A program made the translations under genes and the position numbers. A model generated the notes under the pieces. That model ran no database searches, was not told where the DNA came from, and saw only the letters and a program-made list of their open reading frames with translations. A stretch of 64,000 nt of DNA from Bispira polyomma (Eukaryota). The DNA lies in assembly GCA_965649765.1 (NCBI GenBank), contig OZ287751.1, positions 27,094,001-27,158,000 of the forward strand, written 5' to 3'. Positions 227 to 35,120 of this stretch are shown here, one piece after another. Numbering within the stretch: position 1 is the first letter of the stretch; each line of letters opens with the position of its first letter.

Positions 227-434
227 GTTTTAACGTCAAGATGTTTCAAGATGGGTAGTTTATTGGTGGCAATAAGCGGTTCAGAAAATTACCGGCCTTT
301 AGCAAGTCTACTGGCAAATTTGCATTCATGGTTTTAACGTCAAGATGTTTCAAGATGGGTAATTTATTGGTGGCAATAAGCCGTTTAGAAAATTACCGGT
401 CTTCAGCAAGTCTACTGGCAAATTTGCATTTATG
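227..434. repeat. Two-copy tandem duplication, ~104-bp unit
   Basis: GTTTTAACGTCAAGATGTTTCAAGATGGG...GGCAAATTTGCATT starts at 227 and again at 331 with few mismatches. Confidence 0.9.
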
Positions 435-559
435 GTATGTGGCCCACATGTTGCAGAAGCCGAATTTAAAGGTGGGACATATCTTTAAAATAATGGTAAC
501 CATAAATAGGCCATGTGGAAAGAACAAGGCCCCAAATAAATTTGAATATCTTCCAAGTT

Positions 560-1180
560 TGTGAGTGCAGAAAAACCATCAATTAGGACCAGCACACTGA
601 CAATACATCCCCTCGATAACCCACAGTGTCAATACAACTTTAGAGATCCTTTACTACTTGCTTATTAGACACTGGCAATAGTCTGTTGGCGTGTTGACAT
701 TTTATATACCCCCTGGGGCCCTCTAAAGCCCAGATCACACATAGAAGGATCACAGTGAAAGAAGGTCACAAACTTAAATCTGTGTATGTCAACCATGGTA
801 AAGCCATTAAGGAAATGTTAATTGTATGTTCTTGTACATCTACAATTTGTTCTTCCACATTCACCTTTGCTCCATGATTGTTTGGAAATGTTTAAAAGTT
901 CCATTGCCATGCAGCAAATGCATAGAAACCTACCATGAAATCTTCGCTCTACTGTATGGCAACTGTAAAGGCTTCTTTGTCATTCTTGCCTTTTTGTATC
1001 CATTCTTGTATAAATTTTCAGTGTAAATGTATTACTAGCCTAGAATTGGAAAGGTTAACATGCAGGCATATGTGTGTGTTCTTGAATAAACATCTGTACT
1101 TAATCCATGCAAGCTTTGCTAAAATTATTGCAAGCTCTCAGTAAAACCACGAGTCTTGGAAATCCATAACTGGTGCCGTG
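560..1180 (+). mobile_element. Possible LTR remnant followed by a tRNA-His-type primer-binding site
   Basis: AATAAA at ~1085; ...CCATAAC followed by TGGTGCCGTG (1171-1180), complementary to the 3' end of tRNA-His (CACGGCACCA). Left boundary is a guess and no internal gag/pol was seen. Confidence 0.35.
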
Positions 1181-2049
1181 GTGATTCTTTCTATGTGTGT
1201 GAGCATTAAAAAAATAGCTATGTAAAATTTACTTGGGTGAATTAACATAATGAACTCTTAGAAATCCCTAATAGAAATGTTCTTAACAGCTGAGCAGTAC
1301 CAATACAAAAAAAACTTGAAGAGTATTACATATGTATGATATCAGTGTAGTTTTTTAATATTTAATAAATGACATGTTGCGAGAAGGCTCTATAATAATT
1401 TTTTTGATTTTGACTGATTGTTTTTCTCCAATGAAATATTGTTCAGTAAAAATAAATCAAATGCAGATTATTGGGCCTTAATAAAGGCTAAGTCCCAGTT
1501 ATTAAATATGCCGTTGATACAGGCAATCTTATTTTATGATGAGGGATCATAAGAGCATCTTTTATTGCTAAATATATAGCTTTTGGAAAAATAACTAATT
1601 ACCACAAGCTGAGTGGTGTTTAAAGGGGGTGATAGAAGAGCCAGTTGACATAAGCAGAGCTAGGTAGATTGACATATTTCAGGTACTTTATACTCAATTG
1701 ACTTAGTTATGTATAGCCTTTGTAATTTAAGGAGGTCAGGCTGCTCACCTCCAGAAGACCACCAATTTATTTTAATTGCTTCGGCCTAGTTATTTACTCT
1801 GCGAATGCTCAGAGAGCAGGCAAATATGTTAATATGAAACAGTGTGTGTTTATTTTAGCCCCAAGTTAGTGTAATAATGTATAGTTTTAAGGTGACTATG
1901 AATTACAGAAACGTATCACAAAAAGTATTGAAATAAAGAAGTGTGAAACTGTATTTAATTTTTAAAAATGTACGGGTGTAGGTTCATAGTATGATATTAC
2001 CCCTAGTGAGGTCTCATCCGACTTTATAGTTTACACTCCCAGCCTGGGT

Positions 2050-2280
2050 TCTTCAACTTGTTAACCAATCGTCCACTCTGAGGAAGCATACTAACCATGC
2101 TGCCATATAAGGCGCAAAGACTAACACCCATTAGTAGCCAGGTGCCAATTTACACGCTTGGTTGAAAAGCGACAACTTTGTGTAATATACCTTGCCCATG
2201 GGTATAATCTCCAGACCAGCAGCAATGATTAAACCTTAGACCCGATGATTCAAAGTGGAACACTTTACTCACTAGGCTTA
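2050..2280 (-). mobile_element. Decayed tRNA-derived SINE
   Basis: Minus strand begins AGCCTAGTGAGTAAAGTG (A-box-like) with a degenerate B box, followed by a SINE-like body (GGGCAAGGTAT...GCGCCTTATATGGCAGC). Confidence 0.5.
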
Positions 2281-2489
2281 ATAAGTCGCTTAGGTAACTA
2301 GCTAAACACCTTAATAAAAATGTTAGTGTGATTTCTGTACAAACTTTAGTCACAACAAAATAGTAACAAATTGCACTATTTTTCAAATTATCAGTTGATA
2401 ACAGCTGAACTGTTCTCTTCTCATAGTTATAATTGCACTTACATTGACCAATATATTTTAACCCATGATAGGATAGTATATAATACTCC

Positions 2490-5415: not shown

Positions 5416-6649
5416 ACTAGTCTTGATAGTGGAACAATACCATTAACAGTGATATGTGTGACCTATGTATTATAAACTATTATAGGTAATTTCTAACTTC
5501 TTTAAATCTCTACTGCAAACACTAACACATCAACAAATATTCTGGTATTGAAAACTCTGCAATGAGTGAAATATATTCCTTTAAGTGTTAAACATTACCC
5601 AATAGATTTACAGAAACAAAAAACGTGCCTCAGCTGTTTTTATTTAAGGTGCCAATACTGTCGTCTTGAGAATTTCCCACCAGTTCCCCAACCTGTTAGA
5701 AAATGGCACTGCAAAGCCCATCAACTAAGTAAATGGGCCAAAAGCTCACACCACATTTTGTCAGTTGAACATATAACCATCTCTTTAGCCTTGCTTAAGT
5801 CTCATGTTTGTCAGAAATTCTCATTCAGTTTGGAACCAATTTAAATGTTGTACATGTTTAACTTTAGAAAAAAATTTAATTAAGGCTTGGTCACACTGGG
5901 TTTACATTTATGTTTATTTCATTTTTAGAAATGTAAGCAAAACAGAAATAAACAAACTGAAATTGGGGAAACTGTTTTGGTAGCCATTTCAACTATGTTT
6001 GCGATGTTTGCCACATCTTTAGATAGGTCCCATATGATTTTCTAATGCATTTTATTACATTTCGAAACATTAGTGCCGTCTTATACGTCCATATACGCAT
6101 TAATGACATGTCAGATGTGTCCGAACCCCGAACGCAGCAACCGTTTTAGTGGAGATTGTCAAAAACAGCTATAAATGCAGCATATTTTCATGCAGCTCGA
6201 AATAATAAATTTTTTCTTTGTTTGTCTTATGTTTTATTTACGCAAGCATACATTTATATACATTCAATACGTTAATTTCATTATAAGTTATTATTCATGT
6301 TTTGCCTTCCATCTGCTCATTTTTGTGTACAATTAAAACAACAAGCCAGTGTGAGTGGGCCATAAGTACATGGTCCAAAAGTAGTTACATACATGCAACC
6401 TGTAGAGCTCTAACTGTCATCACAGTACTCTATATAATGTCCACCACCACCACCACCAACATAAACTCATCGACTGTAACGCTGACCTATGGCAAGTAGT
6501 AAGTTTTGAGAAAATATATCCACACGCTAGCTCTCCTTATAGGTGAAAGACCAGTGGTTTTATAGTAGATGCTTATGATCAACAGAAACCCTGGAATTTG
6601 AATTTATTTGGGTTTTACATTATTGTTAACAGTTTAGGTAGTGGTTTTC

Positions 6650-6720
6650 TGTGGCGTAGTGGTTAGGGAAGTGATCAGGTGACCAGAAAGTCCCCGGTTC
6701 AACTCAGAGTGGTGAGGAGT
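6650..6720 (+). mobile_element. tRNA-like SINE head
   Basis: A box TGGCGTAGTGG and B box GGTTCAACTC; no complete cloverleaf. Confidence 0.45.
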
Positions 6721-7517
6721 TGGTCAGGTAAATGAAAGGTTTTTGACTCCTGCTAATGACGCTGGGAACATGCCATTGCCTACTGATGACAATCTAGGCC
6801 AACTAATACAATACAATTTCTTGGTGGAGTAAACCAATGCAGAAACACTGAAAACCACTGTCTTACAGCAACAAAAACATATCTTCTCATATACAGTACC
6901 CCACACTGGGGAATAGTTTTACTAATGATATTCAATTTGTTCCTTCCCTTTATATCGTCCATCTGTAGTTGTAAACTAAAACCTCTTTGTCTCATATTAG
7001 TTTCGCCTTACTAATCGTGACATCTCAAAAGGAACAACCCCCTTTTCTCTTTGAAATAACTAAACGATTACGAACAACCCTGGTGAATTATTGAACCTCA
7101 GAAGTCATGTGTGTTAGACATATCGTGCACAGTGTGAGCACTTCTATGTGTCAGATGTACACAGCAAATGACATCAGATACTTGGCAGAAGCTTAGGAAA
7201 TTTTTTTGGTCATGAAGCAAATAAAACCCTGACACATTTGGCCAGATTTTGGGGTATTTTTGAGCAATATGTATTGTTAAAAACTTGATTCCAATGAAAT
7301 TTGACGGACAGAAACATATTTTTATCAGCTGCATAAAATAATAAATCGGTTGACGTCTGACAAAAAAACTGATCGGCCCATATAAAATATACCGAAGTCA
7401 GGATCTGCGACATTGAAGCCTAGGCTTACGGAATAGAATATAACTGTATTGCCTACTTTCTCAGAGCTTTAGGATGAATCGGCTTTAATATAAACTCCAT
7501 ATTTCATGATGGCCATA

Positions 7518-7882
7518 TATATGTCATGGTAGAAAGTCCAATTTGGTAAAATTTGAAATTCTACCGGTAGAAAGTTTAAAGAAATAAAAAGAAAACACAA
7601 CCTGTGATTTATGTTTTATTGTTTTAAAAAAATGCAGTACATTGCAATATACTAAAAGATATCTTGACTTTTTATGATGTTTGCATATTTTTTTGTATTA
7701 CATACCTTTATAGAGTATATTTTGGCAACAATTGCATCAACCATCTTGTAATATTAATGCTCTGGAAAACAACAAGATTCCCAGTGTTGTTATTCTGATT
7801 ACTGACATATTTAACTCCAGTTGGACTTTCTACCAGTAGAATTTCAAATTCTACCATATTGGACTTTCTACCATGACATATA
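7518..7882. mobile_element. MITE with ~60-bp terminal inverted repeats
   Basis: TATATGTCATGGTAGAAAGTCCAATTTGGTAAAATTTGAAATTCTACCGGTAGAAAG at the left; reverse complement at 7821-7882; TA at both ends. Confidence 0.85.
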
Positions 7883-9338
7883 CATTCATTTGCACTTGCA
7901 GTTTGTCCCTACATTTAAAGGGAGACTGTTTTGAACAATGTTAACAAAGAACTGCACAAACCCATGCTCCACCAAAACTGCTCTCATAGTTTCGTGTCCA
8001 TTTCATCCACACAAATAATTTAATTGGGTTATATAACTTTAGCTGAAAGTTTGATATATGGTATTCAAGGCAAAATAGAGCAAAGTAGTTGGACGTGTTT
8101 TCACCATTGTGCAGAACTTTGATAACAACTTGGTTACTAGGCAAACTCTAAAGTATGTGACTTTACAATAGCAGGCTTAAGGCTGTTATGTCGGCCATCT
8201 TTGTATTCGGTGTTGACAGACAGTTTCTGAAGTGAAAAAATTTTGTATCAATGAAATCAATAAAAAAATAAGAATGTGCTTAATATTCCAGTACTTCCTC
8301 TGATTCTATTGTGTTTGTTCCCTGGAAGCTAATCATTTGTTACTACTATTTTATCCAAACTTAAGGGTAATCCACAGCTACATGTAGTTTAAGTTTTACT
8401 CAATGAAATTTTTAAAGAAAGACAAACTAGTTATCAACTATTTTCTAGTGTTTTTGATGAACCTTTACATTTCCTAGTATTCTAGATCTGTATAACGCTT
8501 GGCGTATAAATGATTGACACTTACTAGACGTACATGTACTATGAATACAGTTAGTTTGAAAATGCCTCAAGCTAAAATTAGTTAATGTCAATTGTTTCTA
8601 AAACCTAAGAAAGCAGCAACATCCAATAGAAAATGCCATTGATTGATAAACCTCCGCCAACTTGTAGTGAATGTAAAGCCAATGAATGACTCCAGGTCCT
8701 CCTTTTCTAATTCTGGCAAACTTGATTATCTCTTTGTTATGGGAGGAAGTCATGGTCCCTTTGTGTTCATAGCATCATCGATATCATTCCCCACAATTCA
8801 GAGAAAACCCTCCATTGGCACCGAGGACTGAACAACACCAATTGATACAATGAAACAAAAAATTATATAATGAACATGTCAAAGCATAGAGGGTGGGGAG
8901 GGGTGTTTTTATATATTTGTGGGAGATGGATAAACAAGTTTAGCCAATAACACAATTTGGATTCCAATAGGTGCCTGGAACACTTCTTTGCAGATATTTA
9001 GACATTCCATCTGAAGATATATAATAGTTTATAAGACATCTGTATTGTTATACTGTTTTACTTTATTTTTCAGTAGACTTATTTGTCATGTATAATAAAA
9101 TTATGACGCCATTTTGTCGCTCAAACCGGGTATGGGACAATGGCAACAGCTAGTTATTATTGTAATATCGGGTATTTACACAGTGCAATACCATACATAA
9201 GCTATGGCCTATGTGCATAACATATACAATAACACCTGCTTGAGACACCACCCACTTGCTTTCAGAGCTGACCATCTGCGGAAGTTTCAAACATGTTCAA
9301 AAAATAATTCCGGCTGTAGCTCCCGTTGTTGCAGTTTA

Positions 9339-9943
9339 AAGCCTGGTCACACCTACACGTGCTGGAGCTACGTGTGTGTGACGCTGTTAACTGTTCTGAA
9401 AGCTAGTATAAACGTAGTAGACAGTAATACAAAAGTGAGGAACTCTGCTGTGTTAGTTTTTTGACGTTGGTTAACAGATGATATCATTCGGGAAAAGTCT
9501 CTGTTTAGTTCACTGCCCCGATAACTTTAAATTGTTTGAAATAATCCTGGCAGAGCTCTCTGTTTCTTAAGAACATCTCTACTCATCTGTATAAGTAGCT
9601 TAACGTAGCAGTAAGTAGCAGTAAATAGTGAGATTGTCTCCACTCATCTGTACTCGTCATGAACATTTCACTAGGTAGCTAAACACAGCAGAACAAAGCC
9701 ATAAGTGGCATGTACAGTAGATCTACGTAGTAGTAGATAATTATATCCCACCAGTAAAGTGTTAGATTTTCGCCCTCGCTCCATGTGTATAAGTACCAAC
9801 ATCATCACGAAACTTTATGAAACGTCACAATCGAATGCACTTTTTTGAAAATGACATCACTTTGACATGAAACTACTATGTTTTAAGTTTATATTGCTTT
9901 GCTTCGTTGTGGGACGTTAGCACGTGTTGGTGTGACCAGGCCA
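9339..9943. mobile_element. PIF/Harbinger-type MITE
   Basis: TIRs AGCCTGGTCACACCTACACGTGCT / AGCACGTGTTGGTGTGACCAGGCC; TTA on both flanks. Confidence 0.85.
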
Positions 9944-11147
9944 TTATCCCTGTTTATGCCCAGTTTACACAAGTTTTACTCCAGTTCACACACATTCTCA
10001 GAACGGGTCGAATGGGGACCGAGAATGTAGACAGTGTGAATGCCACATAAGGTCATATCACAATGGATAGATTCAATGGTGGAAGATATCAGTGCTAAAG
10101 CACTGTCTTAAAAACCAATCTACGTCAAATATGTGACGAACTTTCCCACATGGAGTGATTTTTATATTAACAGCTTCCTGGTTACAGAGTATTAAACTTT
10201 GGTGAATATTCAACGATATTAAAGGGAAAAAATTACTGAATAATTTCAAATTCATTCCAAAAGCTAATTCATAAATAATCAGAAGCTATTTGTTTCAGGG
10301 TCTTCCTGTAATGTTTGGCTATCTTTGATTTGACAGGTAATCACCTAGTTCACCTATATTTTCAGAAAAATAGTTCAGAGCTGTTTTTATTTATACTGAA
10401 ATGTTAGGCTATGATTGATGTTTAATTTAATATATGATTTGTAGGGCCAGCACTTTGCCGGACTTCAGTATAGCGCAAATATTAGTAGTGGTCTAATTCC
10501 ATATGATATGAACCCACATTAATGAGATACCAATGATTGTGAAGGGGACAGAAACTAGACAAATTGGTGATTAGTAGGAAATTGGATCCCTAGTGTTCTC
10601 ACATATGATTCGTCCATCAATGAACTTGGACATCGTATTACCTGACCTACGAAAAATAATGTACACATCCTGCAATGGACTCAATCTCCAACCAGATCTA
10701 AATCATGTGTCGATTCTTATACCTCAACATGCTTTATCAACATTTAATGCTACAATTATGACTTCTCTTGAGAGGAAAAGGTTATAAGAGTTTTTTTCCT
10801 TGTCTATCATAACAGGCTGTTAATACTATGAATATGTTCGCTACTTGCCTGTCTATTTGAATCTTTGTTATCTGTATACTGTGGTGTAATCAGCATAAAG
10901 AGGTTGTTCCACGTTCAAGTACGATCAGCAAAATGGGTCCGTTTTTGAGATCGGTGTGCTCGTGGCAAAAAAATCAATAATGTAATATTTTGAGCAAGTA
11001 AATGAAAGTGTGGGCGACCTTCCAGATCAAACTGATTGAGTCCCGTTTTGACGGGACACAGTCCACAATCAAACTTGTCCATACAAAAACTGCCTCGGCC
11101 TCCCCGACCTAGGTTAGGATCGAACTTACTGGTAAAAGGAACTGATG

Positions 11148-11215
11148 TATCAACCATATCAGCGATAGGATCGACCGTATCGGTGATAGAATCGACCATA
11201 TCGGCGATAGGATCT
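11148..11215. repeat. 21-bp tandem repeat (~3 copies) inside a probable DNA-transposon remnant (~10910-11330)
   Basis: ATCGACCATATCGGCGATAGG-like units; ACCACCCTGTA at ~11318-11328 resembles a Tc1/mariner terminus. Confidence 0.6.
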
Positions 11216-12424
11216 GACAGATCTATACCCCTGTCACTCACAATCATACTTGCAATAATCAAGGTCGGGACTGCTATTTCAAAATAACTGAAAAAAAATG
11301 GTGTTATATTCTTTCACACCACCCTGTATGCTCAGTTTTCGCCCCAAACCTATACGTTAAAAGGGCCAGTGTTGGGAAAGGCCTGGAGTGAGATAAGACC
11401 TAACAGACAGAACGTATTGACAATAAGATTGAACTTATTCGGCGACGCTGACCTTGCCGTTTTTAGGGAAGAGCAAGTCTGGGGGACTTTTTGAAATATC
11501 AAAAATGTTTGATATTCTTTCTGACCTTCACCTTCGCCCTGTTTTCAACCCCCGGACCTATACAGACACGCCCCGGACCTCAAAATTAAGAAGGTCGGGA
11601 ACCAAATTGGCATAGCCGAACCGCCATTTTAGTTTACTGTGGGCAAAGGAAATCATTGCTATTCATAAACCGATGAGATGTTTATGAAAGCGGTAATATA
11701 AAACAAAAATGTCACACAAATCTACTACTCAAGAGTTGGCCTTTTTAAAAATGAATTTGATAACAATCTGGTACATGTCTAATGTACATGTGTGTGCCCT
11801 AGCTCCATCAACCTGGTGATTGCAAGGTATATTAGACTAAAGGCTTGGCCACACCATATGATAATAAACCAGTTCATCTAGCATGAAGAATGGTTTAAAC
11901 TAAGCAGCAAGGACACTAAAGGTATCAGACCCTGCATTTAGAATGCATTGCATTAATGCAGTAGGGTTATAGGTTTATTATAAATACAAGGAACTACACT
12001 TTGAACATGTATCTTTTGTGGAACAATATTTATCTGTATCACATCTAACTCCACATTTTTATTAAATCATATATCTGTGTTACATCTGACTCCTTATTTT
12101 TATTGATTGTTTTGTTTAAAATCTCACAAATTTGTTCAAACTGAATTGAATGTTATAGGATATGGTAATTTTCCAGGATTTTAGTTGGGTTTTACATCAC
12201 TTGTAAAAGCTTAAGGTCATATTATGACGGCCAGATTTAACGGTAGAAGAAACCAGTGCTGAAGCATTCCGTAACCCACTGACCTATGGCAAATATCTGA
12301 CAAACAACATCCACACAAAGGAACAAGTGTTATTCGAAAGCTATACATAAGTCAAAATTCTTAGGGCTCTAGTTATAAGAGGAATGGAAATATTCTCTAA
12401 AACTTACCTAAAGGCGACGACGAG

Positions 12425-12680
12425 GGGCCGCGGTGGCCAAGTGGTTAGCAAGCATTGCGCTTCACAATCACGGGTCTCTCACATCTGAGTGGCGTGAGTT
12501 CGAATCCTGTTGATGCCTATGTGGGAAAGGTGGTAGTTCCTTACTGTGGGCCTCTGGTTTTAGTGCAGAACCTTGACCGACTGTATGCAGTGTTTCCTCC
12601 AGCGTTTGCAACTACCCGTCCCAATGTAACCTACTAAAAGGTACCAGAGTGGACGTTAAATATCCAAATTCAAATTCAAA
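12425..12680 (+). mobile_element. Full-length tRNA-derived SINE (MetaSINE-like body)
   Basis: A box TGGCCAAGTGG, B box GTTCGAATCC, CAAATT-repeat tail; imperfect TSD ACCTAAAG(GCG)ACGACGAG on both sides; close second copy at 36503-36757. Confidence 0.92.
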
Positions 12681-15594
12681 CCTAAAGACGACGAGTAAAT
12701 TTGGATAGATTAAATTATGCTGATTGGTTTTCAGGGTTAAAAAAAGCTACAGGTTTGAGTTACTATATAGCAGCTACCTTTGTTTGTAAAAGATACTTTA
12801 TCAGCACCTGTCTGAATTACACTACTCTAGCAACATTAAAGTTCACTGGGAATAAAACTTTGGTTATTACCTGTATTTGTATTCAACTTTATCTGCCTTT
12901 ATTCATACTGGTAAGTAACTGGCATTCCCCTACTTGATGACAGAAACCTAAGGTTGATCATTTATCAACGTCCTAAAGAATCTTCAGCCTGTCACTGGAG
13001 ATATGACCCAATGACAGAGGATTTTAAGTGGTCATTTGAGCCACTAAGTCTCTGCTTGTACTTAGGGGCCGCATCGCTTGGATCAAACACAGGGTCCCAT
13101 ATACTTCTATGTCCTTACAATGAACTAATGGCTAATGGCATACATAGGTGAACATGTAATTTTAAGTCTATTAACCTTTACATTTTAAGTCGTGTTAAGT
13201 TAACAAATAACATTTTAAGTTGTGTTGAGTTAAAAAATTTACATTTTAAGTTGTGTTGAGTTTATAAAAAAAACATTACCATTTGTTTCAATAAATTCCA
13301 GTTAATTTTGAATTCAGTGACATTTCCAGCTTAAATCCCTGATTTCCCCGATACAGGATGAGACATTATATAGTATATGAGCTGAGTGACGTTATTTACA
13401 TCTGTACCCGGGACTATCCACACTGTAGCCAGTTTGCCCTCTGCTGTCAATGCGCAGCTGGTTACAGTAATTGAGTCATTCCCCCCAAAAAACTCGCTGT
13501 GGCAGAAATCACACCAGTGGAAGGTCTGCACTGGACTCCTGGCACTAAAACACTGCTACACCAGCCAACTGGATTTTGACATTCTCGTGGAGAAAAATAC
13601 TTTAGTAAACAGTCAACTAGCTCTCATAGAGTCCCCAATGGCTACCACCCTCTGAACTTAAGAGAATAACATTTACTTACACATTTATTGACAACATAAA
13701 TCAAAGAACCATTTTCTATCTCTATAAAAGTGTACAATAAAATTTTAAAAGGCTGTTCATCTTCTATAAAATTCTCTTTAAGTTTAGACTTAAATTAAGA
13801 ATGTATATCTATTTACTTAACTTTAAATTAAAGCCTTAATTAATGCAAGGTGGCCTTATGTCCTTTGTATTGCATATCTTAACTATATATAGATTTATTG
13901 AAAATACTTTATCCGCAAACTCTTGATACTGTCTTCACAACTTTAACTTCTAAATTCACTTAAACTGTTTGGGTGATACCTATGTTAAAATCAGGTGTTT
14001 CTTTTTAAAGAATGTACTGTCTGCTTTCTGGGCCACATTATTGAATGACTTTGTTTAATAAATTACTCAGTTCAAGTTTACATTGGTACATCATATTCAG
14101 TAACTTTAAAATACATATTACATTTATTCATCAAAATTATGATATAAAATAATATTTACATGAAATTGCATCGCCTTACTTTTATTTACCTTACCTTCGG
14201 CTCGAACCATTAATTTTAAAGAAACACCTGATTCTTGGCTATTCTGCACTTAATCTGACTTGTACCCTGAAAAACAGTACCTTATACTTGGAAGTGGGTG
14301 TTTTGATCAAATAAGTTATTCACCAAAGTTTTGAGATGTCTAGGTGTGTGAGCTAAACCATACACCCCCCAGAAGCAGCCCCCCCCCCCCACAATAATTA
14401 AGACATTTTGTTAAAAGCCTTCTACAAAGCATAGTCTATTAGTGGTGTATTTATAAACTGCAGCATGCCAATAGTTTAATGAGGGACATCCTTCATCAAG
14501 ATAGAATGGGCCCATGTCATGGATTAGTAATTATCTACAATTAGTGTCCATTATGAGATTTATTTCTGCATTAACCCACATTGGTTGATGCCACAGTAAT
14601 AGTTGTGATGCACATGAAGTGGACTCTTACCTCAGAAATAATTAAGGACTATTAACTACAGTTTGCTCGAGTTGAAGTCAGATAAGGTGAAAGTGGAATA
14701 TGGCAAGCAGATGAGTAGAATAAGAACACAGAACAAAACATATGTTTAAAAAACTCTTTTGGGTTGTTTATTTATAATACCGACCATATTTAAACACATT
14801 TATGAGTACATTGCCTTAACCTTAGTCTAAGGTGACCCTAATGTGTATTGAATGTGTGTCTCTGCACTGTGAGATCACCTGTTTCTGTGACATGTTTTCC
14901 ATTTATAAGGATAGCTTAATTAATTGATACTTTCTGTGCAAGTAACCCTAATTTCTTCAAGGCTTATGTTTGTAAAATGTTACTATGAATATATGTAAAT
15001 TTTGTAGTGCATATGATAAAAATGCCAGGACCACGGGTGCATTGGCAGCCCTGACCAGCAAACGTGTGTTAGGACCCAACATCTACGGCACTGATTCGCC
15101 TAGCAGTAGGGGGCTTATGCCCCCCAGCGCCCCACCTTTGCAGCCCGCACACAAGGAGGCGATTAGGAGACAAGGACTATTACCTAAATGAGACCAGCAA
15201 ATAGTGGTAGACTTATATATGTAGCCATTCATTTGGTGATGTATCACTTGATTGAGGTCCAATAGTAGGCTAAATTCACTGGACAGGGCGTGGCGGCCAT
15301 ATTAAAAGAAGATCTTGCTACTATCACAAGCAACAGGGTTGATAGCATCGTCCTTATACGGTTTAGCATTATATGTATTCATCTGTCAAATCCAACATGG
15401 CCGCGCCCTGGAATTCTAGAACTTGTTACAGACTTGTGTAACAGTCTTAAGGTGTTTTCATTGAGTAGTATATAGTCACATGGCCTGTAACAAAACTGAA
15501 TGTTAATACGAATATTTACTTTGTGCATAATATCACTCAAAATTAAATATAGGCTTTACACAAGTGAAACTATATAATATGATAGATTTTTATG

Positions 15595-16560
15595 CGTCTA
15601 ATTGATGCCAGGCATCTTCTAAAGTGCGACATCATTGACATAGTTGTTTATAAAGCAAATTCGTGATTGGGTTGAGGTTGAAGAGAAAGGTTACTGCTAA
15701 AGCCAGAGAGGGTTTCTTGGGATCGTATATTGTTGGTAAATTATTCCATGGGGTAGGTACTGTAACAGAGAAGGCATAGGATCCAATCTGTTTACTAGTC
15801 CTGGTATCAGAGACTGAAATTCTGTTTCCCCTGGTAAGTCTGCTGAAAGACAACAATGAGGCAAGATATGGGGGCTGACGTAGTTTTACAGCGTTGTATG
15901 TAGTAACATTGGTCTTGGAAATGATACGGTACTTGACGGGTAGTTAATGTGGCCTTTTGAGAAAAGGAGTCGTACTGACGTGTGATCCCACACGGCACAC
16001 ATCTCTGCAGAGGGGCTTCTGAATTGATTGTAGTCTTTGCAGCTGGTACTTCTTTAGTCCAAGAAGTAGATAATTGCAGTAATCCAATAGGCTGCTTACG
16101 AGTGCAACTATTGCGGTTTGATGGTATAGGAGTTTTCTAATACTCTTGAAGTCACGAATTTAGAGGTAACAAGATCAACGTATATTAAAGATATGATCAT
16201 TAAAGGAAAAGTGGGAGTCAAAAGTGACACCTAAATTATTTATTTTATCCGCTGGAAGTACGTCATTGCCAAGTAGATTAATAGGAAACAGTGATTTAAG
16301 TTTATTCCTGTCTGTTTTTAGTGCCAATTAGTATAAATTTTGTTTTGTCAGGATTGAGTGTTAGTTTCTTGACTCCATCCGGCAAGGATGCTGAGCTGAT
16401 CTTGTGCATTGTTTGCTGTTAATGATAGGTACATTTGGGTGTCATCGGCATACATGTGATGTTTGATATTGAGTTTATTTATAATAAAACACAGGGGAAA
16501 GGTGTCAATAATAAATAAAGGGGGCCCCAAGATGGATCACTGGGGGACTCCAAAAGGTAA
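15595..16560 (-). mobile_element. L2-type LINE 3' fragment
   Basis: FGVPQ*S(I)LGPPLF...HHMYADDTQMYLS (RT YADD motif), SRLDYCN-like region, GSYAFSVTVPTPWNNLP, conserved 3' hairpin. Confidence 0.9.
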
Positions 16561-16979
16561 GTTAAAAGGAATAGACTATCTGTATAAGTATGCCTAAATT
16601 GGACCAATTTTGGGCTGCAATAATTTAACTCTTTAACTTCAATTTGCAAAATACTTGAAAAGCTATATCCATAGATTTAATTTGGGCAGTATATTAATCA
16701 AAATAGAACATAGGATTTAAAACAAGTGGAACTATCAATATGTAAGTATGCCTAAATGGCACCAATTGTTGGTCCAAAACAAAACTTGTATTCTAAAAGC
16801 TGTATTCTTCTGACTATCACTTTGTCCCGATTCCTTCAGTAGTCTAGTTCTAAATGGTGAATAAATAAATTCATATTGTAATAAAACCTAAGAATAATAA
16901 AACACAATTTTTACGATCTATATCTATTTTATTCAAAAATTGATCCCTTGGTATGTTAGTTATTGTTTTTACTTCTATA

Positions 16980-17075
16980 GTGCCACAATCAATGACCTGA
17001 CTCTTCTGTGGTGCACATCCCGATCAGTATGTAAAAGAATAATCCATAGTAGAAAGGGTTTGTGATCAGAGTTGA
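16980..17075 (-). mobile_element. 3'-end fragment of the L2 family seen at 3023-4499
   Basis: TGCCACAATCAATGACC...CTGTGGTGCACATCC...TGATCAGAGTT matches 3050-3146. Confidence 0.75.
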
Positions 17076-17231
17076 CACACTTTATGTTATGTAAAAAATG
17101 TCTTCTATTTTACCAATTTATTCGCCTGACCCTCCCGAGTATCCGAATCTCCCGTTTATTCGACTAAAGGTCATGTCTGCGGCAGCATTCAGATAAATGG
17201 ATTTCTTCTCTAGTAGTTTTTGCAGAAGTAT

Positions 17232-17369
17232 AAACTATAAACTTCTTTAGATATATTTTTATATATATATATATACATGTGTATATATCTAGGTTATCAA
17301 ACTATAAACTTCTTTATATATATGTATATATATATATATATATACATGTGTGTATATCTAGGTTATCAA
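17232..17369. repeat. Two-copy duplication (~68 bp) containing (TA)n
   Basis: AAACTATAAACTTCTTTA...(TA)n CATGTGT...CTAGGTTATCAA occurs twice. Confidence 0.85.
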
Positions 17370-18289
17370 TTTTGTGCTAAGATGTAAATTTCCGGCTAGT
17401 ATGTGTTTTACCTGAGCACCAATTCCATCTAACGATGGATTGTCCTATTGATAGCCCTGTCATTTCCTTAGTAAACACTATCATGAAAAAAGGCTACTCA
17501 TATACCAAGTAATTAATACCCCTCTAGTAAAACACAAGAGTGTTTTGTTTTTATATGTAATGTATACATGTATATACAGTCCAGAGGGAGAGGAATTTTC
17601 AGGTGCATCTATGTTTGTAATAGATAAATCATTGCTGACTTCAGCTGATAATGGGCTTGATATGTGGCTTGAATAAATTACTTACTACAGATCAAATGAG
17701 AAGTGATAACAGTTCATATTGTTCACATTTATGTAATGTGATGTGAGAAACAATACATACAGTTGATCTTGTTTACAACAGAGTTTGTAAATAGAAGGTC
17801 ACTCAGTAGACTGCATACCTCCACGAAAGTGTCGCAGTACAAACAAAGTGAAAATAATTCTTTGATCTAGATATTCTCTACAATTTACTTGATTTTCCCC
17901 ATGTCCCGTCACTAAATTTCATGTAAATCGGTTCAGTGGTGTTTGTGTATTCCTAGTGACAAACAAACAGATGAACCAACAGATATAAGTGAAAATATTT
18001 TAAAAACACCTGTGTTGATGCGAGTAAACCAACTAACAAACATAATGAAAACATAACCTCTGTGGCACTTGTAAAAAATAATCGTAATGCTAGTACTATA
18101 TTTACGATCTAGTTTAAAAACTGACGTAAAGTTAACAATACATTACGATATGGCTACATCCTCATGTCATGCTGGCAAAATGAACACCTCACAGATAATG
18201 CTTGAAATTCTGGTAATAAGTAAAATAGTTCCCATGTATAGTTTTTGAGTAACTTTGTTGCAATGAGATGGATTAAAATGGGACTTTAC

Positions 18290-18915
18290 TATTGTGAAAG
18301 CAAAAGAATCAGAAATCACTTGTCATTGAATACTGCTATGATTGTTGCTCATACTCTTGTAAGTAGCCACCTTGATTACTGCAATTCTCTTTTGTTTAGG
18401 GTAAATAAGTCTCGCATTAAAAAGTTACAGACCATTCAAAACTATATATGTGGAGTAATATTTTACATGGGCATTCGAACCAATGTCATTCCCTACCTCA
18501 AACAATTGCATTAGCTTTCCATTTATTATAGGATTTTGTTTTAAATTCATGGCACAACTTTCAAATCTGTTGTCTCTGAACAGTTTTCCTACATTGCTAC
18601 TCATCATTCTTTCAGTAACCTTAAAAGAGGAAATATACTCTCTGCTTCTTCTGTAAAAACCAAAGAGGACTGAATATAGATCTTTCTCAATAGCTGTTAT
18701 GGATTGGTCTACCAGTTCAGCTTAGATTACTGGAAACACTGTCTGGGTTTATGACAAATCTATTTTTTCAAACTCATTTAACCTCGTTAATTCCCTCTAT
18801 GTACAGCCCCACATCCTTCCATGAGACTGATGTCTTAGGACTTCACGATTGTTTTATTGATTTGGTTGTTGCACTTTAGATGATGCCTTGCATCTATAAA
18901 GTGCAATAAAATACG
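18290..18915 (+). mobile_element. L2-type LINE 3' fragment
   Basis: KRIRNHLSLNTAMIVAHTLVSSHLDYCNSLLF...KKLQTIQN...PYLKQLH*; 3' hairpin GATGCCTTGCATC. Confidence 0.9.
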
Positions 18916-21722
18916 TAATATATTACAATACAATATAGAAACAAGTTTAGAATTTTATACCAATGACTTATCAATCGGGCATAATCTGACTACTTTTTTA
19001 AATTTATTTGAATGGTTTGTACTATAATTATAATGGCACAGTTAGAATCAAATGAGAGACAGTGTGAGTAAGCAATATCAGTGTAAAAGCACACTAAAAA
19101 TACAACACAGCAAATATCAGGACAAACACAAAGATGCACACAATGCACTTTTGATAGGCAAATACTACAGGTCTTGATCGTGCAGTTCTCAGACTAGGGG
19201 GATTTATTCAGCTTGAGAGACAATGACCTTTAATAATAAAACTATGTGGTTTAAAGATCTATTGTCTCTGTACAGCAATACAGCTTTATATAAACTCTTT
19301 TTTCAATTTTAAGAATAAACTTGTAAAATATATCCACAAAAAAAATTGCGGCCAAAGTGAGTGCCACTAGCCAAAAAAAAAACTCTTCATATCAAATACT
19401 TACTAATAAGTGCCCATGCCCAAATGGTAACTTAAAATATTCTTTATTTTTAATAAAAAAAAAATGTGAAGATTTTTTTGTTAGAAATGGGGTTCTCACA
19501 TATATTTCAATGATTTCTAATGACAATTTAAGTTATATTACTCATTATTTTCACTATAACAATGACTTCATATTTCAGTTTATGTTTATTATATTAGGAA
19601 AAGCGCCAAACTGATAACTATTTTTGCATTTGCATACATATGAACCCCATTGACATTGCCTTCACTGATTGATAGATGGCTAAGTGGGAATTTCAAGATT
19701 ACTCTGGATCAACAGGGTTTGTAGTTAGAGGTTGGAGGCAAGGGAAAAAAATCAAAGTGTGAGGGGAAGCAGGAAACAAAGGTAATTCTTCTTAGGGGAA
19801 ATTAACCATTGCCCTTCTGTGACTTTGGGCTATAAATAATGCCAAGTTGTTTCGGAACTCATGCCTCTTTTGTTCATTCTGATTAAAGTCCTGTTTTATG
19901 AGTGTGTGTGTGCTACTAACTTACAAAACTATGCAATACTAAAACAGGGTCAATATATAAAATATAAAATTGACTAAGTCAGTTGTAATGTTTGTTGGTA
20001 AGACATATACGTTTATGGTAGTTCGAGTATTTCTTAAAAGTGGTAATATGTTTATATGGCTTATCAGAAGATTTTTGCAAAAATATTTTTTTTTTTAATT
20101 ACTTGTTTGTGTGATACATATTGTTTTCAACACATGCCTCTTTTTATAGAATGTACTGTTTGTCAACCATTGTATGAAAGCTTAATTCATACACTATTAC
20201 ACTAAATGCAACAAAGTGATATCCAAAATTTTTATTGTTTAATAAATTATTGTGGTTCGATTGCTGCACACCTGTCAACTAATTAATAATCTTATATTAT
20301 CGCAAAAAATTGGGATTTTTTGATAAATTACTGTGCTTTAATTGTTTCACAGCTATGAACTAATTCATGATCTCTTATAGATCCAAATACTGTGGCCTCC
20401 AGGGTGATGGCCGGCTTCATTACCAAAGCAACCAGATCAATATTTCATAACCAATATTAAGTAAAAAATATATGCTACTCCTTTAGTCCCTTTCACTGTC
20501 AAGCTCTTCTTATATACATCTTCGTTTAAAAAAGTTTTAATTAACAAGGACTTTGCCCTGACATGTTTCTAAAATTGTATAACTTAACTTAAGCAGTTTT
20601 ATAGAGGGGTCCACTAAGACCACTTCTCTGTTGTTTAAAATGACTGTCATATCCCATTTCCGTGCTGTCAAATCAGTGCATATCTATAAACATAGGCAGT
20701 TAAGTTTACATTGGTACATCATAAATTTATGTTGGCTTTATTCATGAAAATCGTTAAATAAAATTATATTAACATATAATTTTATCGCCTTACCTTTATT
20801 CGTTACTGTCACCTTAGGTTTAAGCAGTTTAAGCCTTCGGCTTGGACAATTAATTTTAGAGAAACTCCTGCTTCACGACAATTCCCCTACACATAGAATT
20901 CAAATCATTGAAAAGAATCTCTTCTGTAGTTGATACTATTTACATGAGTTGTAGTCCCCTTTGTAATTTTGCAATTAAGCACTATTACTAAGTGGCATTG
21001 AGGCAATTATGGTGCTTTGTTATTGCTGAGTTTCATGACAGATAGCAACCTACTTTATATGGTCTATTCTTGATACAGTGAGCTCTGTTATTAGAACTGT
21101 ATTCTAAACAAGAGTATGTGAAGACAATTGTGTGTTCATTAATGAAGAAGGTGTAATTTGTCACATGGCAAGTATCATCAATGTTGACACTTTTTAGGGT
21201 ATATATTGTTGACTCATCGCCAAAGCAAACTCGGCCACAGTCTGGCCAACTCAGCACCAATTCTAGTTGGCACACTGGTCACCACTGATTTATAAATTAA
21301 CTTACATAAAATTTTATGTCAGTCAGAAACATCAGTAACTTTACATGAATCGACTTTCACAACATTCCGCTCGGACCATTAATTTTAAAGAAACACCTGA
21401 TTCTTGGCTATTCTCCTACACGTAATTTCTAATTGCACAAGATGGCAGTCCATATAATGTTAATGTTATAAACTTCTATAGCACCACAACTCAGGCATTC
21501 ATTCTCTGGAGGTGAATATCCCCAATCATGTTCTAATAAAGAGTAGTCTGGTGGAATAAAAGGTTTCTCATCGATTGGTCCAGTCACAATCACAGATATA
21601 TTATAGAAAAAACACCAAGTAGATGGAGAAAGGGGTTTTAAGAGGGATGTTTTAAAACAAAACCAGGAATCTTTGTTTCGGCTGTTTATTGCCAGTCTAT
21701 TCGGAATGTGCTCAGACTCTAA

Positions 21723-22271
21723 TGCCGTGGTCACACTGAGCTTACATTTAGCTTACCCACAAAAAATGCCGAACGTAAGGTAAAACGTAGTGAACGGAAG
21801 TAAAACATAGTAAACATTTATGTTTTTTGCCATTTGCTGCAAAACTTTCAGGAAACGGGTGGTGCATTCGCAGAAAAGTATCAAAACTTATATAATACGT
21901 ATTTGACATGAACAACAGGAGTAAAACCAACTATACCTACACATAATATTAGGGACGAGGAGAACGAGAGCGAAACAGGTTTACAAACATTAAAAACTAA
22001 ACTGAAAAGGGGTTTAGAAGCGTGATAACGAGGCTAAAACATGGCCAACAAGGCTCACGTATTATTAAAAGGTGTCTAACGAGTTAAACATAATGAAAAT
22101 GGCTAATAAAACATATTGAATGTGTGTACAAACGTGTACAGATGAGTACTGAACGAGTACAAAACAGCCCATATATTTGATTTTTGCTATGTTTCCCCAT
22201 TTTTCCATGGTTTTTAACTTCGTTTTTCTTCCTGTTACGAAAATGCGAAAGTACTCAGTGTGACCACGGGA
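21723..22271. mobile_element. PIF/Harbinger-type MITE
   Basis: TIRs TGCCGTGGTCACACTGAG / CTCAGTGTGACCACGGGA, flanked by TAA and TTA. Confidence 0.8.
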
Positions 22272-23416
22272 TTAAAGATATGAAAAAGTTGGAATAATGA
22301 TTCCCTCTCGTGAGAATGCTGAAATATATCACGGAGGAAATTGAAAACATTTAATTAAAATTTTACACAGAACTCGATTGGCAGTGAACCAGTGGAGCTT
22401 TTATAAATGTGAGCCAAGACCGACTTGAAGTTCAATTCCTCAGAGATTGATGTAGATTTTTGCAGCTTTTGATAAAGTCCCTGTCTGATACCATGCAATA
22501 TAGAATTGTAATAGTCAAGTGTTCATGCGAGGCATTCAAAACTGCAATTGTATTTTTACATGGTCACATACTTATCAGCGCATACAAGTACTCTGTTATT
22601 GAGTCTTATGCCCAGTGTTGATAAATGGTTTCCTCATATATTTCTGCCGGCTGTAAGCTTCAGTAAATTGACACAGAATATATAACCAGGTGTTAAGGGT
22701 AACACTCCAGAGCAACAAGTGAGTCTGTCATCAATAACCTCATCTAAATTAAGGTTTTGTAATCAGAAGTGCTGCCATGTTGGCACAGGTGGTAACCTAG
22801 TCAATTCTGTCATTGTGACAGTGGCATCCTAGATATAGCAGATACATAGTGACTATGACTTGTAAGAACCATATTTTGGTCTCGGTCTAAGAATGATTCC
22901 AACTGGCAGGTCAAACAATACTGGGTTCATTGATAAATGATGCCATTTTTCAGCCTCTTTCTTTAGGTTGAAGAGAGACAGTTACTGTTGCTGGTTGGCT
23001 GTACTTGTGCACATAAAAAGGGGTGGCACCTCAAGGATACCACAGCTACAATATACCTGGGGGTTTCCCTGCCAGATCTGTGATCGTTTGCATGTATACC
23101 GCAGCAATGGTGTGTTAGGTATTTTTTTCCAGCTAAAAGTTGTACTTATATACACCTTAGGAGATACTTTGTCATAAATTTGGTCATACATAAGTTTTAA
23201 TCAATAAGCCATTTATATTATTTTATATGATCAAAACCTGGTTGCTGTAAAAAAGAATGTACTCTTCCCATTTTCACAATATACCGGCATCTTAGATCTA
23301 TGATTATAACACTTCTATAAATATAAGATTTCCAGAATATAATTTGAATAGTTGTCCCTTAGAATCTCCTAAGACAGACATTGAAACTCTACTCTGATTG
23401 TGTTTTATTACATTAA

Positions 23417-24990
23417 AGGGGCTGTCCCACCATGCCGATTATAGCTCCCGACCATCCTGATTATACAATCGGTATATAATTGGGACAATCTTCGGGACAA
23501 TGGGTGAGTTGTCCCGATTTATCGTCGTCACTCAGGACAATCTTGGTCACTTGTCCCAATTAACTAAGACGTTTGAAAACCTCTGCGACTGGCTGACTTT
23601 CATCTGATAGATTAGGGTCAATCGAGGTCAATTGTCAGCTGCCAACAAGTTATCTTTACCTTAAAAAGACGCAACTGTTCAATCAGGATCTAAATCGGGA
23701 ATAAATTTAGCCATCATGATAAGGATTTATTGTCCCATCCATCCCGATGGGTCGGGGGCATTATGAGTCATTGTCCACTTCTCCCGAGTTATCCTGTCAG
23801 ATGTTAACAATCGATTGTAAGAAATGGCCTGATTCTAAAGATAGCTCAGGAATGTCATAAGGATAGGTCTTTACCAAGCTCCCGATTCTAAAGATAACTC
23901 GGGAAAAGTGACCAATAGATCTTTAGGAAGCCCCGAGTGTAAAGATAGCTCGGAAAGACCAACGATAGGTCAGGTGGAATAAAGAATAACTCAGGAGTGA
24001 AACCGATAACTCAGGCGCAAATATTTGATTAATCGAGGGCGGAAAGCGGATTGTAGAGAAGGTGGACGAGTCACTCTTCTTACAACAGATTCATCCCAGC
24101 TTTCAGAGAGGACAGATCAATTGGCAATATTTTAAGAAATATTAGTATAGATGATTATAACAGGGATAACAGAAACTCAACAGTCCGCGATAGAAAGTGA
24201 CACCCCAGAACTTTTTTCCCAGAGCCACGATACCCAGGATATTTGGGAAACACAGGATACACTGGACAGGGAGGTGGCGGCCGACCCCAGTCGCAAACAC
24301 GGGAAGGGAATAATAAGGACTGTGTTGTTAGCTGATAAGCAGGAGGCTGTAGTGGACTTCCTGAAGAACTGTGAGTGGCTCTACAATAAGCACGATTCAC
24401 AGTATAAAGACACTCAGAAGAAAAACATGCTGTGGAAGGAGTACTGCACGGCCACTGGATTAGATAAGACAGAAGTTATGAAGTGGTTCCATACCTAGAG
24501 GACTATCTTCGGCAAGCTGAGTATGGGCTAGTCTGGGTAAGCTGCCATCGAGTTGACCGAGTGACAGCAATGGGTGAAGACCAGCTTCGACTTCCTTAAG
24601 CTGCATATAAAGTGCCAGCTTAACAAGTCTGCCGGCTTCAAGCCTATCGCATCAGCTTCTCAGGGGGCTGCTCCTTGTAAATGTCCAACACCAGGGGTGT
24701 CTCACTCTGATACATATCAGGGTGAGATGGAGTCATCCCTCAATGTGGCCTCATCCAAAACTTCAACAGCCTTCGAATCCTCTACCCTATCCAGGAGTGA
24801 CAGTTCAGCATTTAATTTTGCGATTGAGAGGATGGAAGAGAAAATAACAGGAATCCTGAAGGAGGCCAAGAAACCCCAAGATGAAGGACCACGAGGAGCT
24901 TTCTTGAACTGGTTAGCCATGGAGGCTGGGAAACTGCTAGAACATTCCTTCCTGAAGTTTAGGAAGGAGTCCTTCAACGTAATAACCACA
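23417..24990 (+). mobile_element. PIF/Harbinger remnant carrying a MADF (Myb/SANT-like) DNA-binding pseudo-ORF
   Basis: TAA then GGGGCTGTCCCACC terminus; subterminal CCCGA/TCGGG repeats; 24151-24960 encodes EAVVDFLKNCEWLYNKHDSQYKDTQKKNMLW...VMKWFHT*RTIFGKL (MADF-like) with stops. Confidence 0.8.
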
Positions 24991-25319
24991 CTCCAGTTTA
25001 TTGGTTTACATTTTCCAACACATTCCCAGTACTTGCCTTTAATATTTGATGGCATCCCTGTGGAAGCTCAGTTACATAAAATATTTTTCAAATTCATAAA
25101 GTGTCTCTTAGAGAGTGGAAATCATATTTTTGGTTATGTGGAAAACTGACTATGACTGATAGTAAATATGAAGTATCAAGATCTCTTTTATATCTGTTGT
25201 ATCCTTATAAAATTCCCTTTGATCATGTGAATTTCTGTGATATTCTCAGAAAAGTTCCTACCGACGGCAAAAGTTATTACATTGTTAACATTCAAAATAT
25301 CCAGCTTCTGCTTATCATG

Positions 25320-33485: not shown

Positions 33486-35006
33486 TCATTGGTTATAACT
33501 ATCCACTGTGTTAACTGAAGCCTTCCCATCTATGACTTCATTGCCTTGGTCTGCTCGATGGACAGCTGATCTCTTCTCACCTGTTTGACCTTGACCTCCT
33601 TCTCTGCCCATCTGCGTGTAGGTATCCTTGTATTCTCGCCTGTCGTCCACATTGTCTGAGGCCTCCCATTTACCAATTACAAAGTCTTCGATACCATTGT
33701 GATATCTCTTATCTTGGGGGCTCGGGGCACTTTTCTTGACGCCTACAAGGAAATCGGTATATTTACTTCCAAGGCTCTGTTTTTTGCCGAAGCCAGGCAT
33801 GGGTGAAAATCTTGCTCGCTTGCCCAACACAAAGTCACGATATCCAGCTGTGTCCTTGTTACCCGCCAAGAACTGGTCATAATTTGGGTGCCCTCTTTTA
33901 CCCAAAACAAAGTCATCATAGCCACTCCTCTTCCCAAGGACAAAGTAATCGTAGTCCGTACTCTTTTTTTCCTGACAGAAAGTTATCATAGGCACCTTCT
34001 GGTGAAGCTTTTTTTCCTAGAACAAAATTATCATACCCTTTATCAAGGTCGCTTTTCTTTCCCAGAACAAACCCGTTATAACCTCCCTCTAGGGAATTCT
34101 TTTTACCTAAAACAAACTTATCAAAACCTTCCTCTGGGGTACCTTTTTTACCTAAAACAAACCCATTAAACCATCTTTCTGGGGCATCCTTTTTACCTAA
34201 TACAAATTTATCAAACCCTCCTTCTGGGATACTCTTTTTACCTAAGACAAACCCATTAAACCCTCCCTCTGGGGAACTTTTCTTTCCTAAAACAAAATTA
34301 TCATAACCACTTCTTTTCTTACCCAGTACAAAATTATCATACTCCCCTTCAGGAGACCTTTTCTTTCCCAGTACAAAATTATCAAACCCTTCCTGAGGGG
34401 AACTTTTTTTCCCCAACACAAATCCATCATAGCCTTCTTTGGGGGAACTTTTCTTTCCCAAGACAAAGTTATCAAAGTCCTGTGTACCTTTCGACTTTTT
34501 TCCCAGCACGAACTGACCGTGTAGCCATCATCAGTACCTTTAGGCACAGCTCTCCTAACACGCCGCTTTCCCAGTACAAAATCCTTGTAATTCTGCATAC
34601 GCTTCCCAAGAACGAAATGATCAAAGTCGTATGGTCTTTTACTTCCAGTCAGTAAGTCTGTGTATGCATCCCTCTTGACGTCCAGCATGTCTGTGTAACC
34701 GTTTCTCTTTGCCCCCATGACAAAATCCATGTACCCGAGTGGCTGCCTCTTCATCCCCACTATAAAGTCGCTGAGATCTGCTCGCTTCACAGTACCTTCT
34801 CCCACCAGGAAGTCGTAGTATTTGGGATTCTCCCTCTTAATTTTCCCAAGAAGAAATCCCATATAAGAACTTTCATCACGTGGCATCCCACGTTTTCCCA
34901 AAAGAAAGCTTTCGTATGATGGTCTCACATTCCGCTGGAACGATGGATGCAATCCCTCTTCTGCTAATGCCAACGAAATAATAACTGCACATAAAATGAT
35001 GGACAT
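33486..35006 (-). CDS. Multicopy prepro-neuropeptide (FVL-amide-type), ~505 aa if two indels are repaired; frame-disrupted as assembled
   Basis: ATG at 35006; signal peptide MSIILCAVIISLALA; 17 ...FVL-G-KK/KR units plus FLLG, FLVG, FIVG, FVMG, FLSG, FLAG and FVIG variants between dibasic sites; RVRR furin-type site; TGA at 33486-33488. Pieced from ORFs 34287-35027, 33916-34509 and 33486-33995. Confidence 0.93.
33970..34515 (-). repeat. Coding minisatellite, 45-bp unit (15 aa, KKSSPEGGFDNFVLG-like), ~12 copies
   Basis: Regular 15-codon repeats in ORF 33916-34509, one shortened to 12 codons. Confidence 0.9.
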
Positions 35007-35120
35007 CACTGTTTGTAAATAAATCACTTTTCAAATGGTTCACCAAAATGTTCGCTTTGTAGTAACTTTGCAAAGGTTTTTAACCAGTGCTAATAATGTT
35101 AGCGTGCACACATTCTTGTG

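What the first reader, a model, noticed from the sequence alone, without database searches (positions are those of the whole stretch)
33486..35006. Large multicopy FVL-amide neuropeptide precursor hidden across three ORFs: a candidate uncharacterised peptidergic signalling system
Seen: joining three minus-strand ORFs gives a signal peptide followed by about 27 related peptides with core [YF]-x-x-F-[VLI]-[LVMI]-G, flanked by KK/KR. Seventeen end FVL-G-K[KR] (e.g. SSPQEGFDNFVL, SGYDDFVL, MQNYKDFVL, PYDFDHFVL). Established: G before a dibasic site is the PC1/PC2, carboxypeptidase E and PAM amidation signature, so these should be C-terminally amidated. Inference: I cannot place the family among the common bilaterian ones (RFamide, MIP/Wamide, allatostatin A/buccalin, PxFVamide, EFLGamide). 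The nearest C-termini I recall are annelid FILamide/FVMamide-type precursors, so it is either a divergent member of that poorly studied group or a new family with an unknown receptor. Broken frames mean automated annotation would probably miss it.
Basis: partly seen in the sequence, partly recalled or inferred. Interest (0 to 1): 0.88.

Follow-up and report, generated by a model that had tools for sequence, protein, structure and literature searches.

The report
Worm neuropeptide gene copied twenty times
This is a broken duplicate of a known annelid neuropeptide gene (FVMamide, also called FILamide); the unusual part is that the gene sits in a 40-kb block copied to 20 places on five chromosomes, where all but two copies are decaying.

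Summary
The precursor is real: a signal peptide, about 27 related peptides and 17 FVL-G-K[KR] sites, split by two one-base frameshifts. It is not a new family. Its best relatives are a Paralvinella protein and Urechis FILamide, and it shares motif and three-part layout with Platynereis FVMamide, whose amidated peptides were detected by mass spectrometry.

An exhaustive search found 20 copies in 8 clusters on 5 chromosomes, 2.6% apart with a star-shaped tree. There is also a ~100-kb satellite of ~154 gene fragments. Only two copies (C4:26.885 and C4:26.837 Mb) keep an open frame. Copies evolve neutrally overall (N/S ratio 1.03); the open pair shows a modest deficit of amino-acid changes (p~0.02).

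The window's copy is most likely a pseudogene. The amplification looks passive: a microhomology tandem duplication followed by dispersal. No RNA or read check was possible.

The parts
34962..35006 (-). Signal peptide (15 codons from the ATG at 35006; the upstream in-frame ATG of most copies is GTG here, at 35009)
34566..34961 (-). N-terminal region of divergent FVMamide-type peptides, many not amidated, as in Platynereis FVMamide
34551..34565 (-). Furin-type R-x-x-R site (RRVRR) separating the N-terminal region from the repeat array; matches RKRR in Platynereis and RYRR in Urechis
34524..34525 (-). First break: one base missing relative to all 17 other copies read here; not in a homopolymer; private to this copy
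33971..34524 (-). 45-bp repeat array encoding KK-flanked [YF]xxFVL-G peptides, out of frame after the first break; four units fewer than the longer open copy
33964..33970 (-). Second break: run of 7 A instead of 6; the same run is lengthened in at least 7 other copies
33486..33963 (-). C-terminal KR-flanked peptides, acidic tail and stop codon
24993..38443 (.). Second, truncated unit of the 39.6-kb amplicon, carrying this gene copy
1..24996 (.). Right-hand part of the preceding amplicon unit (begins at C4:27079441, outside the window; its broken gene copy lies at C4:27.089 Mb)
24993..24996 (+). Head-to-tail junction with 4-bp microhomology CCAG; the same junction occurs at six other places, and eight outer array ends fall on these points
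24151..24996 (+). Decayed Harbinger-type Myb/MADF gene, cut by the junction
   Evidence: (PF10545, E 0.008, below cut-off); dispersed relatives ~80% identical
2500..5000 (-). Decayed Harbinger transposase interrupted by a LINE fragment; passenger within the unit
   Evidence: PF13359 by features, score 0.96
38414..38443 (.). (TA)n microsatellite at which this unit is cut, 3.4 kb upstream of the ATG
38444..48262 (.). Dispersed repeat with 72-bp tandem arrays that follows the cut; shared at 91-97% with the arrays at C6:79.28 and C6:82.02 Mb

Best explanation
The gene is this worm's orthologue of annelid FVMamide/FILamide. An open copy gives a ~567-residue prepropeptide. By established pathway knowledge, signal removal, furin/PC cleavage at KK/KR, carboxypeptidase trimming and PAM amidation would yield about 20-25 [YF]xxFVL-amides. 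Processing is shown in Platynereis and inferred here. A role in neuronal control of cilia is inferred from Platynereis larvae, and signalling through a GPCR is assumed. In this lineage a 39.6-kb stretch holding the gene among transposon relics was duplicated head to tail through a 4-bp microhomology (junction shown). It was then copied in a short burst to eight clusters on five chromosomes, with later deletions, inversions and insertions (copies shown; replication-based or circular-DNA mechanism inferred). The extra copies were redundant and decay neutrally. The window's copy is one of 18 broken ones, and the two open copies at C4:26.84-26.89 Mb most likely carry the function.
For: Top hits are Paralvinella KAK2146576 (E 1e-59) and Urechis FILamide QUP52035 (E 2e-18). 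Same three-part layout as Platynereis FVMamide, whose precursor also contains FVL-G-KR units; KNYQDFVM-amide was detected by MS, against MQNYKDFVL here. 20 copies with all 21 candidates scored and no diverged outlier. Flanks co-duplicated at 93-98% over the whole unit. Two open frames. Distinct changes S61/N159/stop10 against neutral 63/160/7. Coding divergence 3.1% versus flank 2.6%. Star-shaped tree. CpG sites, 6.5% of positions, carry 25% of changes, so the differences are real mutation. Open pair has 20 amino-acid changes against 33 expected, p 0.019.
Against: No RNA or read data for this species. About 0.7 open copies of 20 are expected by chance, so two is not significant on its own (P 0.14; lesions were slightly overcounted, which understates the chance expectation). 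The open copies also carry motif-damaging changes. The outer ends of the arrays could not be read, so a large mobile element as carrier is not excluded. Changes upstream of first lesions trend below neutral (N/S 1.84 versus 3.04 downstream, p 0.13).
Confidence: 0.75

Rival explanations
1. Dosage amplification. The copies were retained because they raise peptide output. A modular precursor cut short by a frameshift still releases its upstream peptides, and a single-exon coding region gives little handle for junction-dependent mRNA decay.
For: Some broken copies stay in frame for 238-381 codons and still encode 9-18 FVL-type amidation sites; the window copy keeps 4. Signal peptides are mostly intact, and N/S upstream of first lesions is lower than downstream.
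Against: Overall ratio 1.03. Stops at codons 70-75 in several copies. Coding DNA is no more conserved than flanks. The upstream/downstream difference is not significant (p 0.13).
Confidence: 0.12
2. The arrays are cargo of a giant mobile element (CACTA, Harbinger, Helitron or Maverick type) whose true ends lie outside the 39.6-kb unit.
For: Dispersal to five chromosomes in a burst. The same outer points recur at eight array ends. Harbinger transposase and MADF relics lie inside the unit.
Against: The Harbinger relics are old (72-83% to their families), broken, and not co-located in their dispersed relatives among the hits listed. No Helitron Rep domain lies within 250 kb of any array, with all 49 candidates scored. 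The junction is a microhomology inside a coding relic, not an element end. Other arrays end at varied points.
Confidence: 0.2
3. The window's copy is functional and its two breaks are assembly errors.
For: One break is an A-run, a typical long-read error. The two breaks compensate. The copy has no in-register stop.
Against: The first break is not in a homopolymer. The copy has lost its first ATG, carries 14 amino-acid versus 7 silent changes, and is cut 3.4 kb upstream by a repeat. Broken frames are the norm among its siblings.
Confidence: 0.08
4. A new neuropeptide family unrelated to described ones.
For: The main repeat ends in FVL rather than FVM or FIL. No Pfam family matches. No paper using the name FVLamide for a peptide turned up.
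Against: Platynereis FVMamide and Urechis FILamide precursors both contain FVL-G-K[KR] units and share the layout.
Confidence: 0.03

Closest known systems
Platynereis dumerilii FVMamide precursor (GenBank JF811328; PMC3890597)
   Same: Motif Y-x-x-F-V-[ML]-G-K[KR]; divergent, partly non-amidated N-terminal peptides; furin site; KK-flanked array; KR-flanked FVL/FVM units towards the C-terminus.
   Different: Main repeat ends in FVL, with longer Ser/Pro/Glu spacers. Here the gene has 20 genomic copies, 18 broken.
Urechis unicinctus FILamide (QUP52035, MT162136; PMC7737342)
   Same: 31% identity over 334 residues to the open paralogue; shared N-terminal landmarks (LLGKIK/ILGKIK, YxDFxMG, R-x-R-R); contains FVL-G-KK units.
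   Different: 336 residues with 8 peptides against ~567 with 20-25. Published as Urechis-specific; by motif and layout it is the FVMamide orthologue (my inference).
Paralvinella palmiformis KAK2146576 (unnamed, 732 aa)
   Same: Best database hit (E 1e-59); single coding exon; same layout.
   Different: Repeats end in FLM/FLL; annotated as hypothetical.
Interspersed segmental duplications with microhomology junctions and permuted order (PMC7450558)
   Same: Short microhomology junction. The C9:16.9 Mb array runs in permuted order across the junction with only one gene, while C9:47.0 and C10:48.5 Mb are unpermuted single units.
   Different: Twenty copies rather than a pair. The permuted copy could equally derive from a tandem dimer, and its left end was not read.

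Membership tests
Annelid FVMamide/FILamide precursors | N-terminal signal peptide, no other domains | tested here: met
   Hydrophobic N-terminus (no SignalP run); no Pfam domain above cut-off
Annelid FVMamide/FILamide precursors | Repeated [YF]-x-x-F-[VIL]-[MLI]-G before KK/KR | tested here: met
   compared
Annelid FVMamide/FILamide precursors | Layout: divergent N-terminal peptides, furin site, KK array, KR-flanked tail | tested here: met
Annelid FVMamide/FILamide precursors | Best named database relatives belong to this family | tested here: met
Annelid FVMamide/FILamide precursors | Host is an annelid | tested here: inconclusive
   Only annelid orthologues among named hits; no FVLGK or FILGK in nemertean, brachiopod and phoronid supplement files, some cut when stored. 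No independent marker gene could be compared; an earlier scan note also calls the genome a worm's.
Annelid FVMamide/FILamide precursors | Neuronal expression and amidated peptides in vivo | not testable with these tools
Annelid FVMamide/FILamide precursors | Single open reading frame (this copy) | tested here: not met
   Two frameshifts in the window copy; met by the paralogues at C4:26.885 and C4:26.837 Mb
FVamide/EFLGamide (TRH-like) and FLamide precursors | C-termini RMFV-, FSEFLG- or YFL-amide | tested here: not met
   Peptide inventory; listed as separate families in PMC3890597; motifs partly from memory
Helitron-captured gene | 5' TC and 3' CTRR termini, RepHel linked to copies | tested here: not met
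   Junction is a CCAG microhomology with no TC start; no PF14214 hit near arrays; the outermost ends were not read
Harbinger (PIF) element carrying cargo | Terminal inverted repeats and 3-bp target duplication around the unit; transposase and MADF from one family | tested here: inconclusive
   Both relics present but broken; dispersed relatives not co-located in the sampled hits; outer flanks unavailable
Segmental duplication | More than 1 kb, more than 90% identical copies of host DNA including flanks and old repeats | tested here: met

The most novel reading that the evidence does not exclude
The amplification changed signalling: several broken copies are still transcribed and release their upstream amidated peptides, so this worm has a several-fold higher FVL-amide dose and a shifted peptide mix, supplied by an amplicon that spread between chromosomes as a circle or inside a giant element.
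Probability: 0.12. Interest if true: 0.6.

Novelty: new member of a known kind. Interest (0 to 1): 0.3.

Why it matters
For peptide biology the gain is small but tidy. It adds an FVL-dominated member to the FVMamide family, indicates that Urechis 'FILamide' is the same family, and names two open loci to annotate instead of this broken one. For genome biology it is an uncommon case (from my own knowledge, multi-peptide neuropeptide precursors are usually single-copy) of such a gene amplified to 20 copies and turned into a 100-kb satellite. That gives a natural test of how much extra dose a peptidergic system tolerates, and of whether truncated modular precursors stay partly active. It also warns that primers, probes or knock-outs for this gene would hit many loci.

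Tried and rejected
Pfam on the three pieces gave nothing above cut-off. The word-indexed search with the middle piece was blank; the exhaustive HMMER search and the full-length open paralogue found the family. Spider, crinoid, rotifer and fungal hits are repeat look-alikes with other C-termini or unrelated repeats. Weak genome hits on C2 and C7 are unrelated minisatellites. A splice acceptor just before the ATG was rejected because that AG occurs in only four copies. Uncollapsed haplotypes were rejected: 20 distinct sequences on five chromosome-scale contigs with CpG-biased differences. Helitron transport is not supported. Neither open paralogue protein is on record as an exact sequence. No paper on an amplified neuropeptide gene in an annelid turned up.

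Full report
Observation. It begins with a 15-residue hydrophobic leader, followed by about 27 related units. Seventeen read FVLGK[KR], and the motif occurs nowhere else in the window. The middle is a 45-bp tandem array. The frame breaks twice: one base is missing between 34525 and 34524, and an A-run at 33970-33964 is one base too long. The first frame ends after 239 codons with four amidation-ready units.

Family. Pfam and the word-indexed search gave nothing. HMMER over 1.84 billion representatives returned a Paralvinella protein and Urechis FILamide near the top. With a natural full-length paralogue as query, these two were the only hits (E 1e-59 and 2e-18). The Platynereis FVMamide precursor in the supplement of PMC3890597 has the same plan: divergent and partly non-amidated N-terminal peptides, a furin site, a KK-flanked array, then KR-flanked units that include FVL-G-KR. 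Its peptides were found amidated by mass spectrometry, for example KNYQDFVM-amide, against MQNYKDFVL here. FVMamide raises ciliary beat frequency and reduces arrests in Platynereis larvae (PMC7017327). FILamide is expressed in the Urechis apical organ (PMC7737342). The family is described as annelid-specific, and no FVLGK or FILGK string occurs in the held nemertean, brachiopod and phoronid supplement files. The Urechis paper calls FILamide species-specific; by motif and layout it is the same family (inference). The Paralvinella coding region is one exon, as here. I recall no receptor for FVMamide, but could not check the deorphanisation paper.

Copy number. Searching the window's own genome (G000; 1.035 Gb, 75 contigs; window at C4:27094001-27158000) found the gene many times at 92-97% protein identity. 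A search with the unique 3' end scored all 21 candidates and gave 20 loci: four on C4, six on C6, two on C9, four on C10 and four on C12. None is a diverged outlier. On C12, 18.91-19.01 Mb is a tandem array of about 154 units of 637 bp. Each unit holds 152 bp of upstream DNA, the first 120 codons and a short later piece. Of the 20 genes, only C4:26885167 (566 codons from the second ATG) and C4:26836910 (491 codons) are open. Twelve full-length copies read here, including the window's, carry one or more frameshifts or stops. Five more are truncated, deleted or stopped, and the C12:18.91 Mb copy is split across frames.

The duplicated unit. The flanks are copied with the gene at 93-98% across window 1-38443. 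The tandem neighbour lies 39,645 bp away. The head-to-tail junction is at 24993-24996, a CCAG microhomology inside a decayed Myb/MADF gene. Six other places carry the same junction. Four arrays start at this point and four end at it. C9:47.0 and C10:48.5 Mb hold one unit, C4:26.81-26.90 two, and C10:40.60-40.72 three with internal deletions. C6:81.95-82.09 holds several with inversions. C9:16.9 runs across the junction with a single gene, a permuted order. Apart from the gene, I saw only transposon relics in the unit: LINE pieces, palindromic elements, and a broken Harbinger transposase at about 2500-5000. Small host exons could have been missed. The window's unit is cut at a (TA)n run at 38443 by a dispersed repeat that two C6 arrays share.

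Age and selection. Flanks differ by 2.6% on average and coding parts by 3.1%. The tree is star-shaped, which points to a burst. CpG positions are 6.5% of sites and carry 25% of changes, so the differences are real mutation. Distinct coding changes number 61 silent, 159 missense and 10 nonsense, against 63, 160 and 7 expected under neutrality. The open pair has 20 missense changes where 33 are expected from flank branch lengths (one-sided p 0.019, one of several tests run), while silent changes match (12 versus 13). Two open copies out of 20 is not itself beyond chance (P 0.14). In broken copies, sites upstream of the first lesion show N/S 1.84 against 3.04 downstream (p 0.13). That is a hint only.

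Mechanism. Shown: family identity, copy number, lesions, junction and neutral drift. Inferred: a microhomology-mediated tandem duplication of ordinary host DNA, then dispersal of whole or partial arrays by replication-based copying. The permuted C9 copy fits a circular intermediate (PMC7450558) but could also come from a tandem dimer. A Helitron carrier is not supported. The Harbinger relics are old and their dispersed relatives were not co-located in the sampled hits. A larger element with ends beyond the unit remains possible, because those flanks could not be fetched. Earlier scan notes, unchecked by me, report other young tandem amplicons in this genome, so large duplications may be common here.

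Limits. The host is inferred to be an annelid from this gene family alone.

Verdict. A new member of a known family. This copy is most likely a pseudogene from an unusual but apparently passive 20-fold amplification. Interest 0.3.

Noticed in passing
G000:C12:18912476-19010507 (units in L002, L006, L020): About 154 tandem 637-bp units built from the 5' part of this neuropeptide gene; many units keep the ATG and signal peptide. A coding gene fragment turned into satellite DNA.
   Followed up: partly
L027 4378-4629 and L033 5143-5394; window 12424-12675 and 36502-36755: A ~254-bp mobile element present twice in the window has also inserted into the coding array of two C12 gene copies at the same site.
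   Followed up: partly
L029 8313-8537 (G000:C9:16938313-16938537, +): Exon of an unrelated secreted protein (signal peptide then coiled-coil-like stretch) about 1 kb beyond the right end of the C9 array.
   Followed up: no
window 54947-57802 (-): Integrase-core (PF24764, E 3e-28) transposase, interrupted by a high-copy palindromic element at about 55554-56720.
   Followed up: partly
window 48307-57000: A separate large repeat family (88-98% copies on C2, C5, C6, C7, C8, C9) with an endonuclease-like fragment at 50708-50983 recognised by eye only.
   Followed up: no
window 44748-48262: 1.55-kb direct duplication (95.6%) with 72-bp tandem arrays inside the repeat that truncates the amplicon.
   Followed up: no
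window 63112-63435 (+): Exon of a VTT-domain (TMEM41-like) gene, PF09335 E 1.6e-6.
   Followed up: no
P0004, P0005, P0006, P0021 (L042): Unnamed FVMamide-like precursors in metagenome assemblies; P0006 lies on a gene-dense 19.7-kb scaffold, possibly from a compact-genome worm.
   Followed up: partly
window 35112: A ~480-bp deletion upstream of the gene, shared with the C6:79.27 Mb copy, which also shares two coding changes, the GTG start and the downstream repeat, although the flank tree does not group them; suggests mosaic exchange between arrays.
   Followed up: partly
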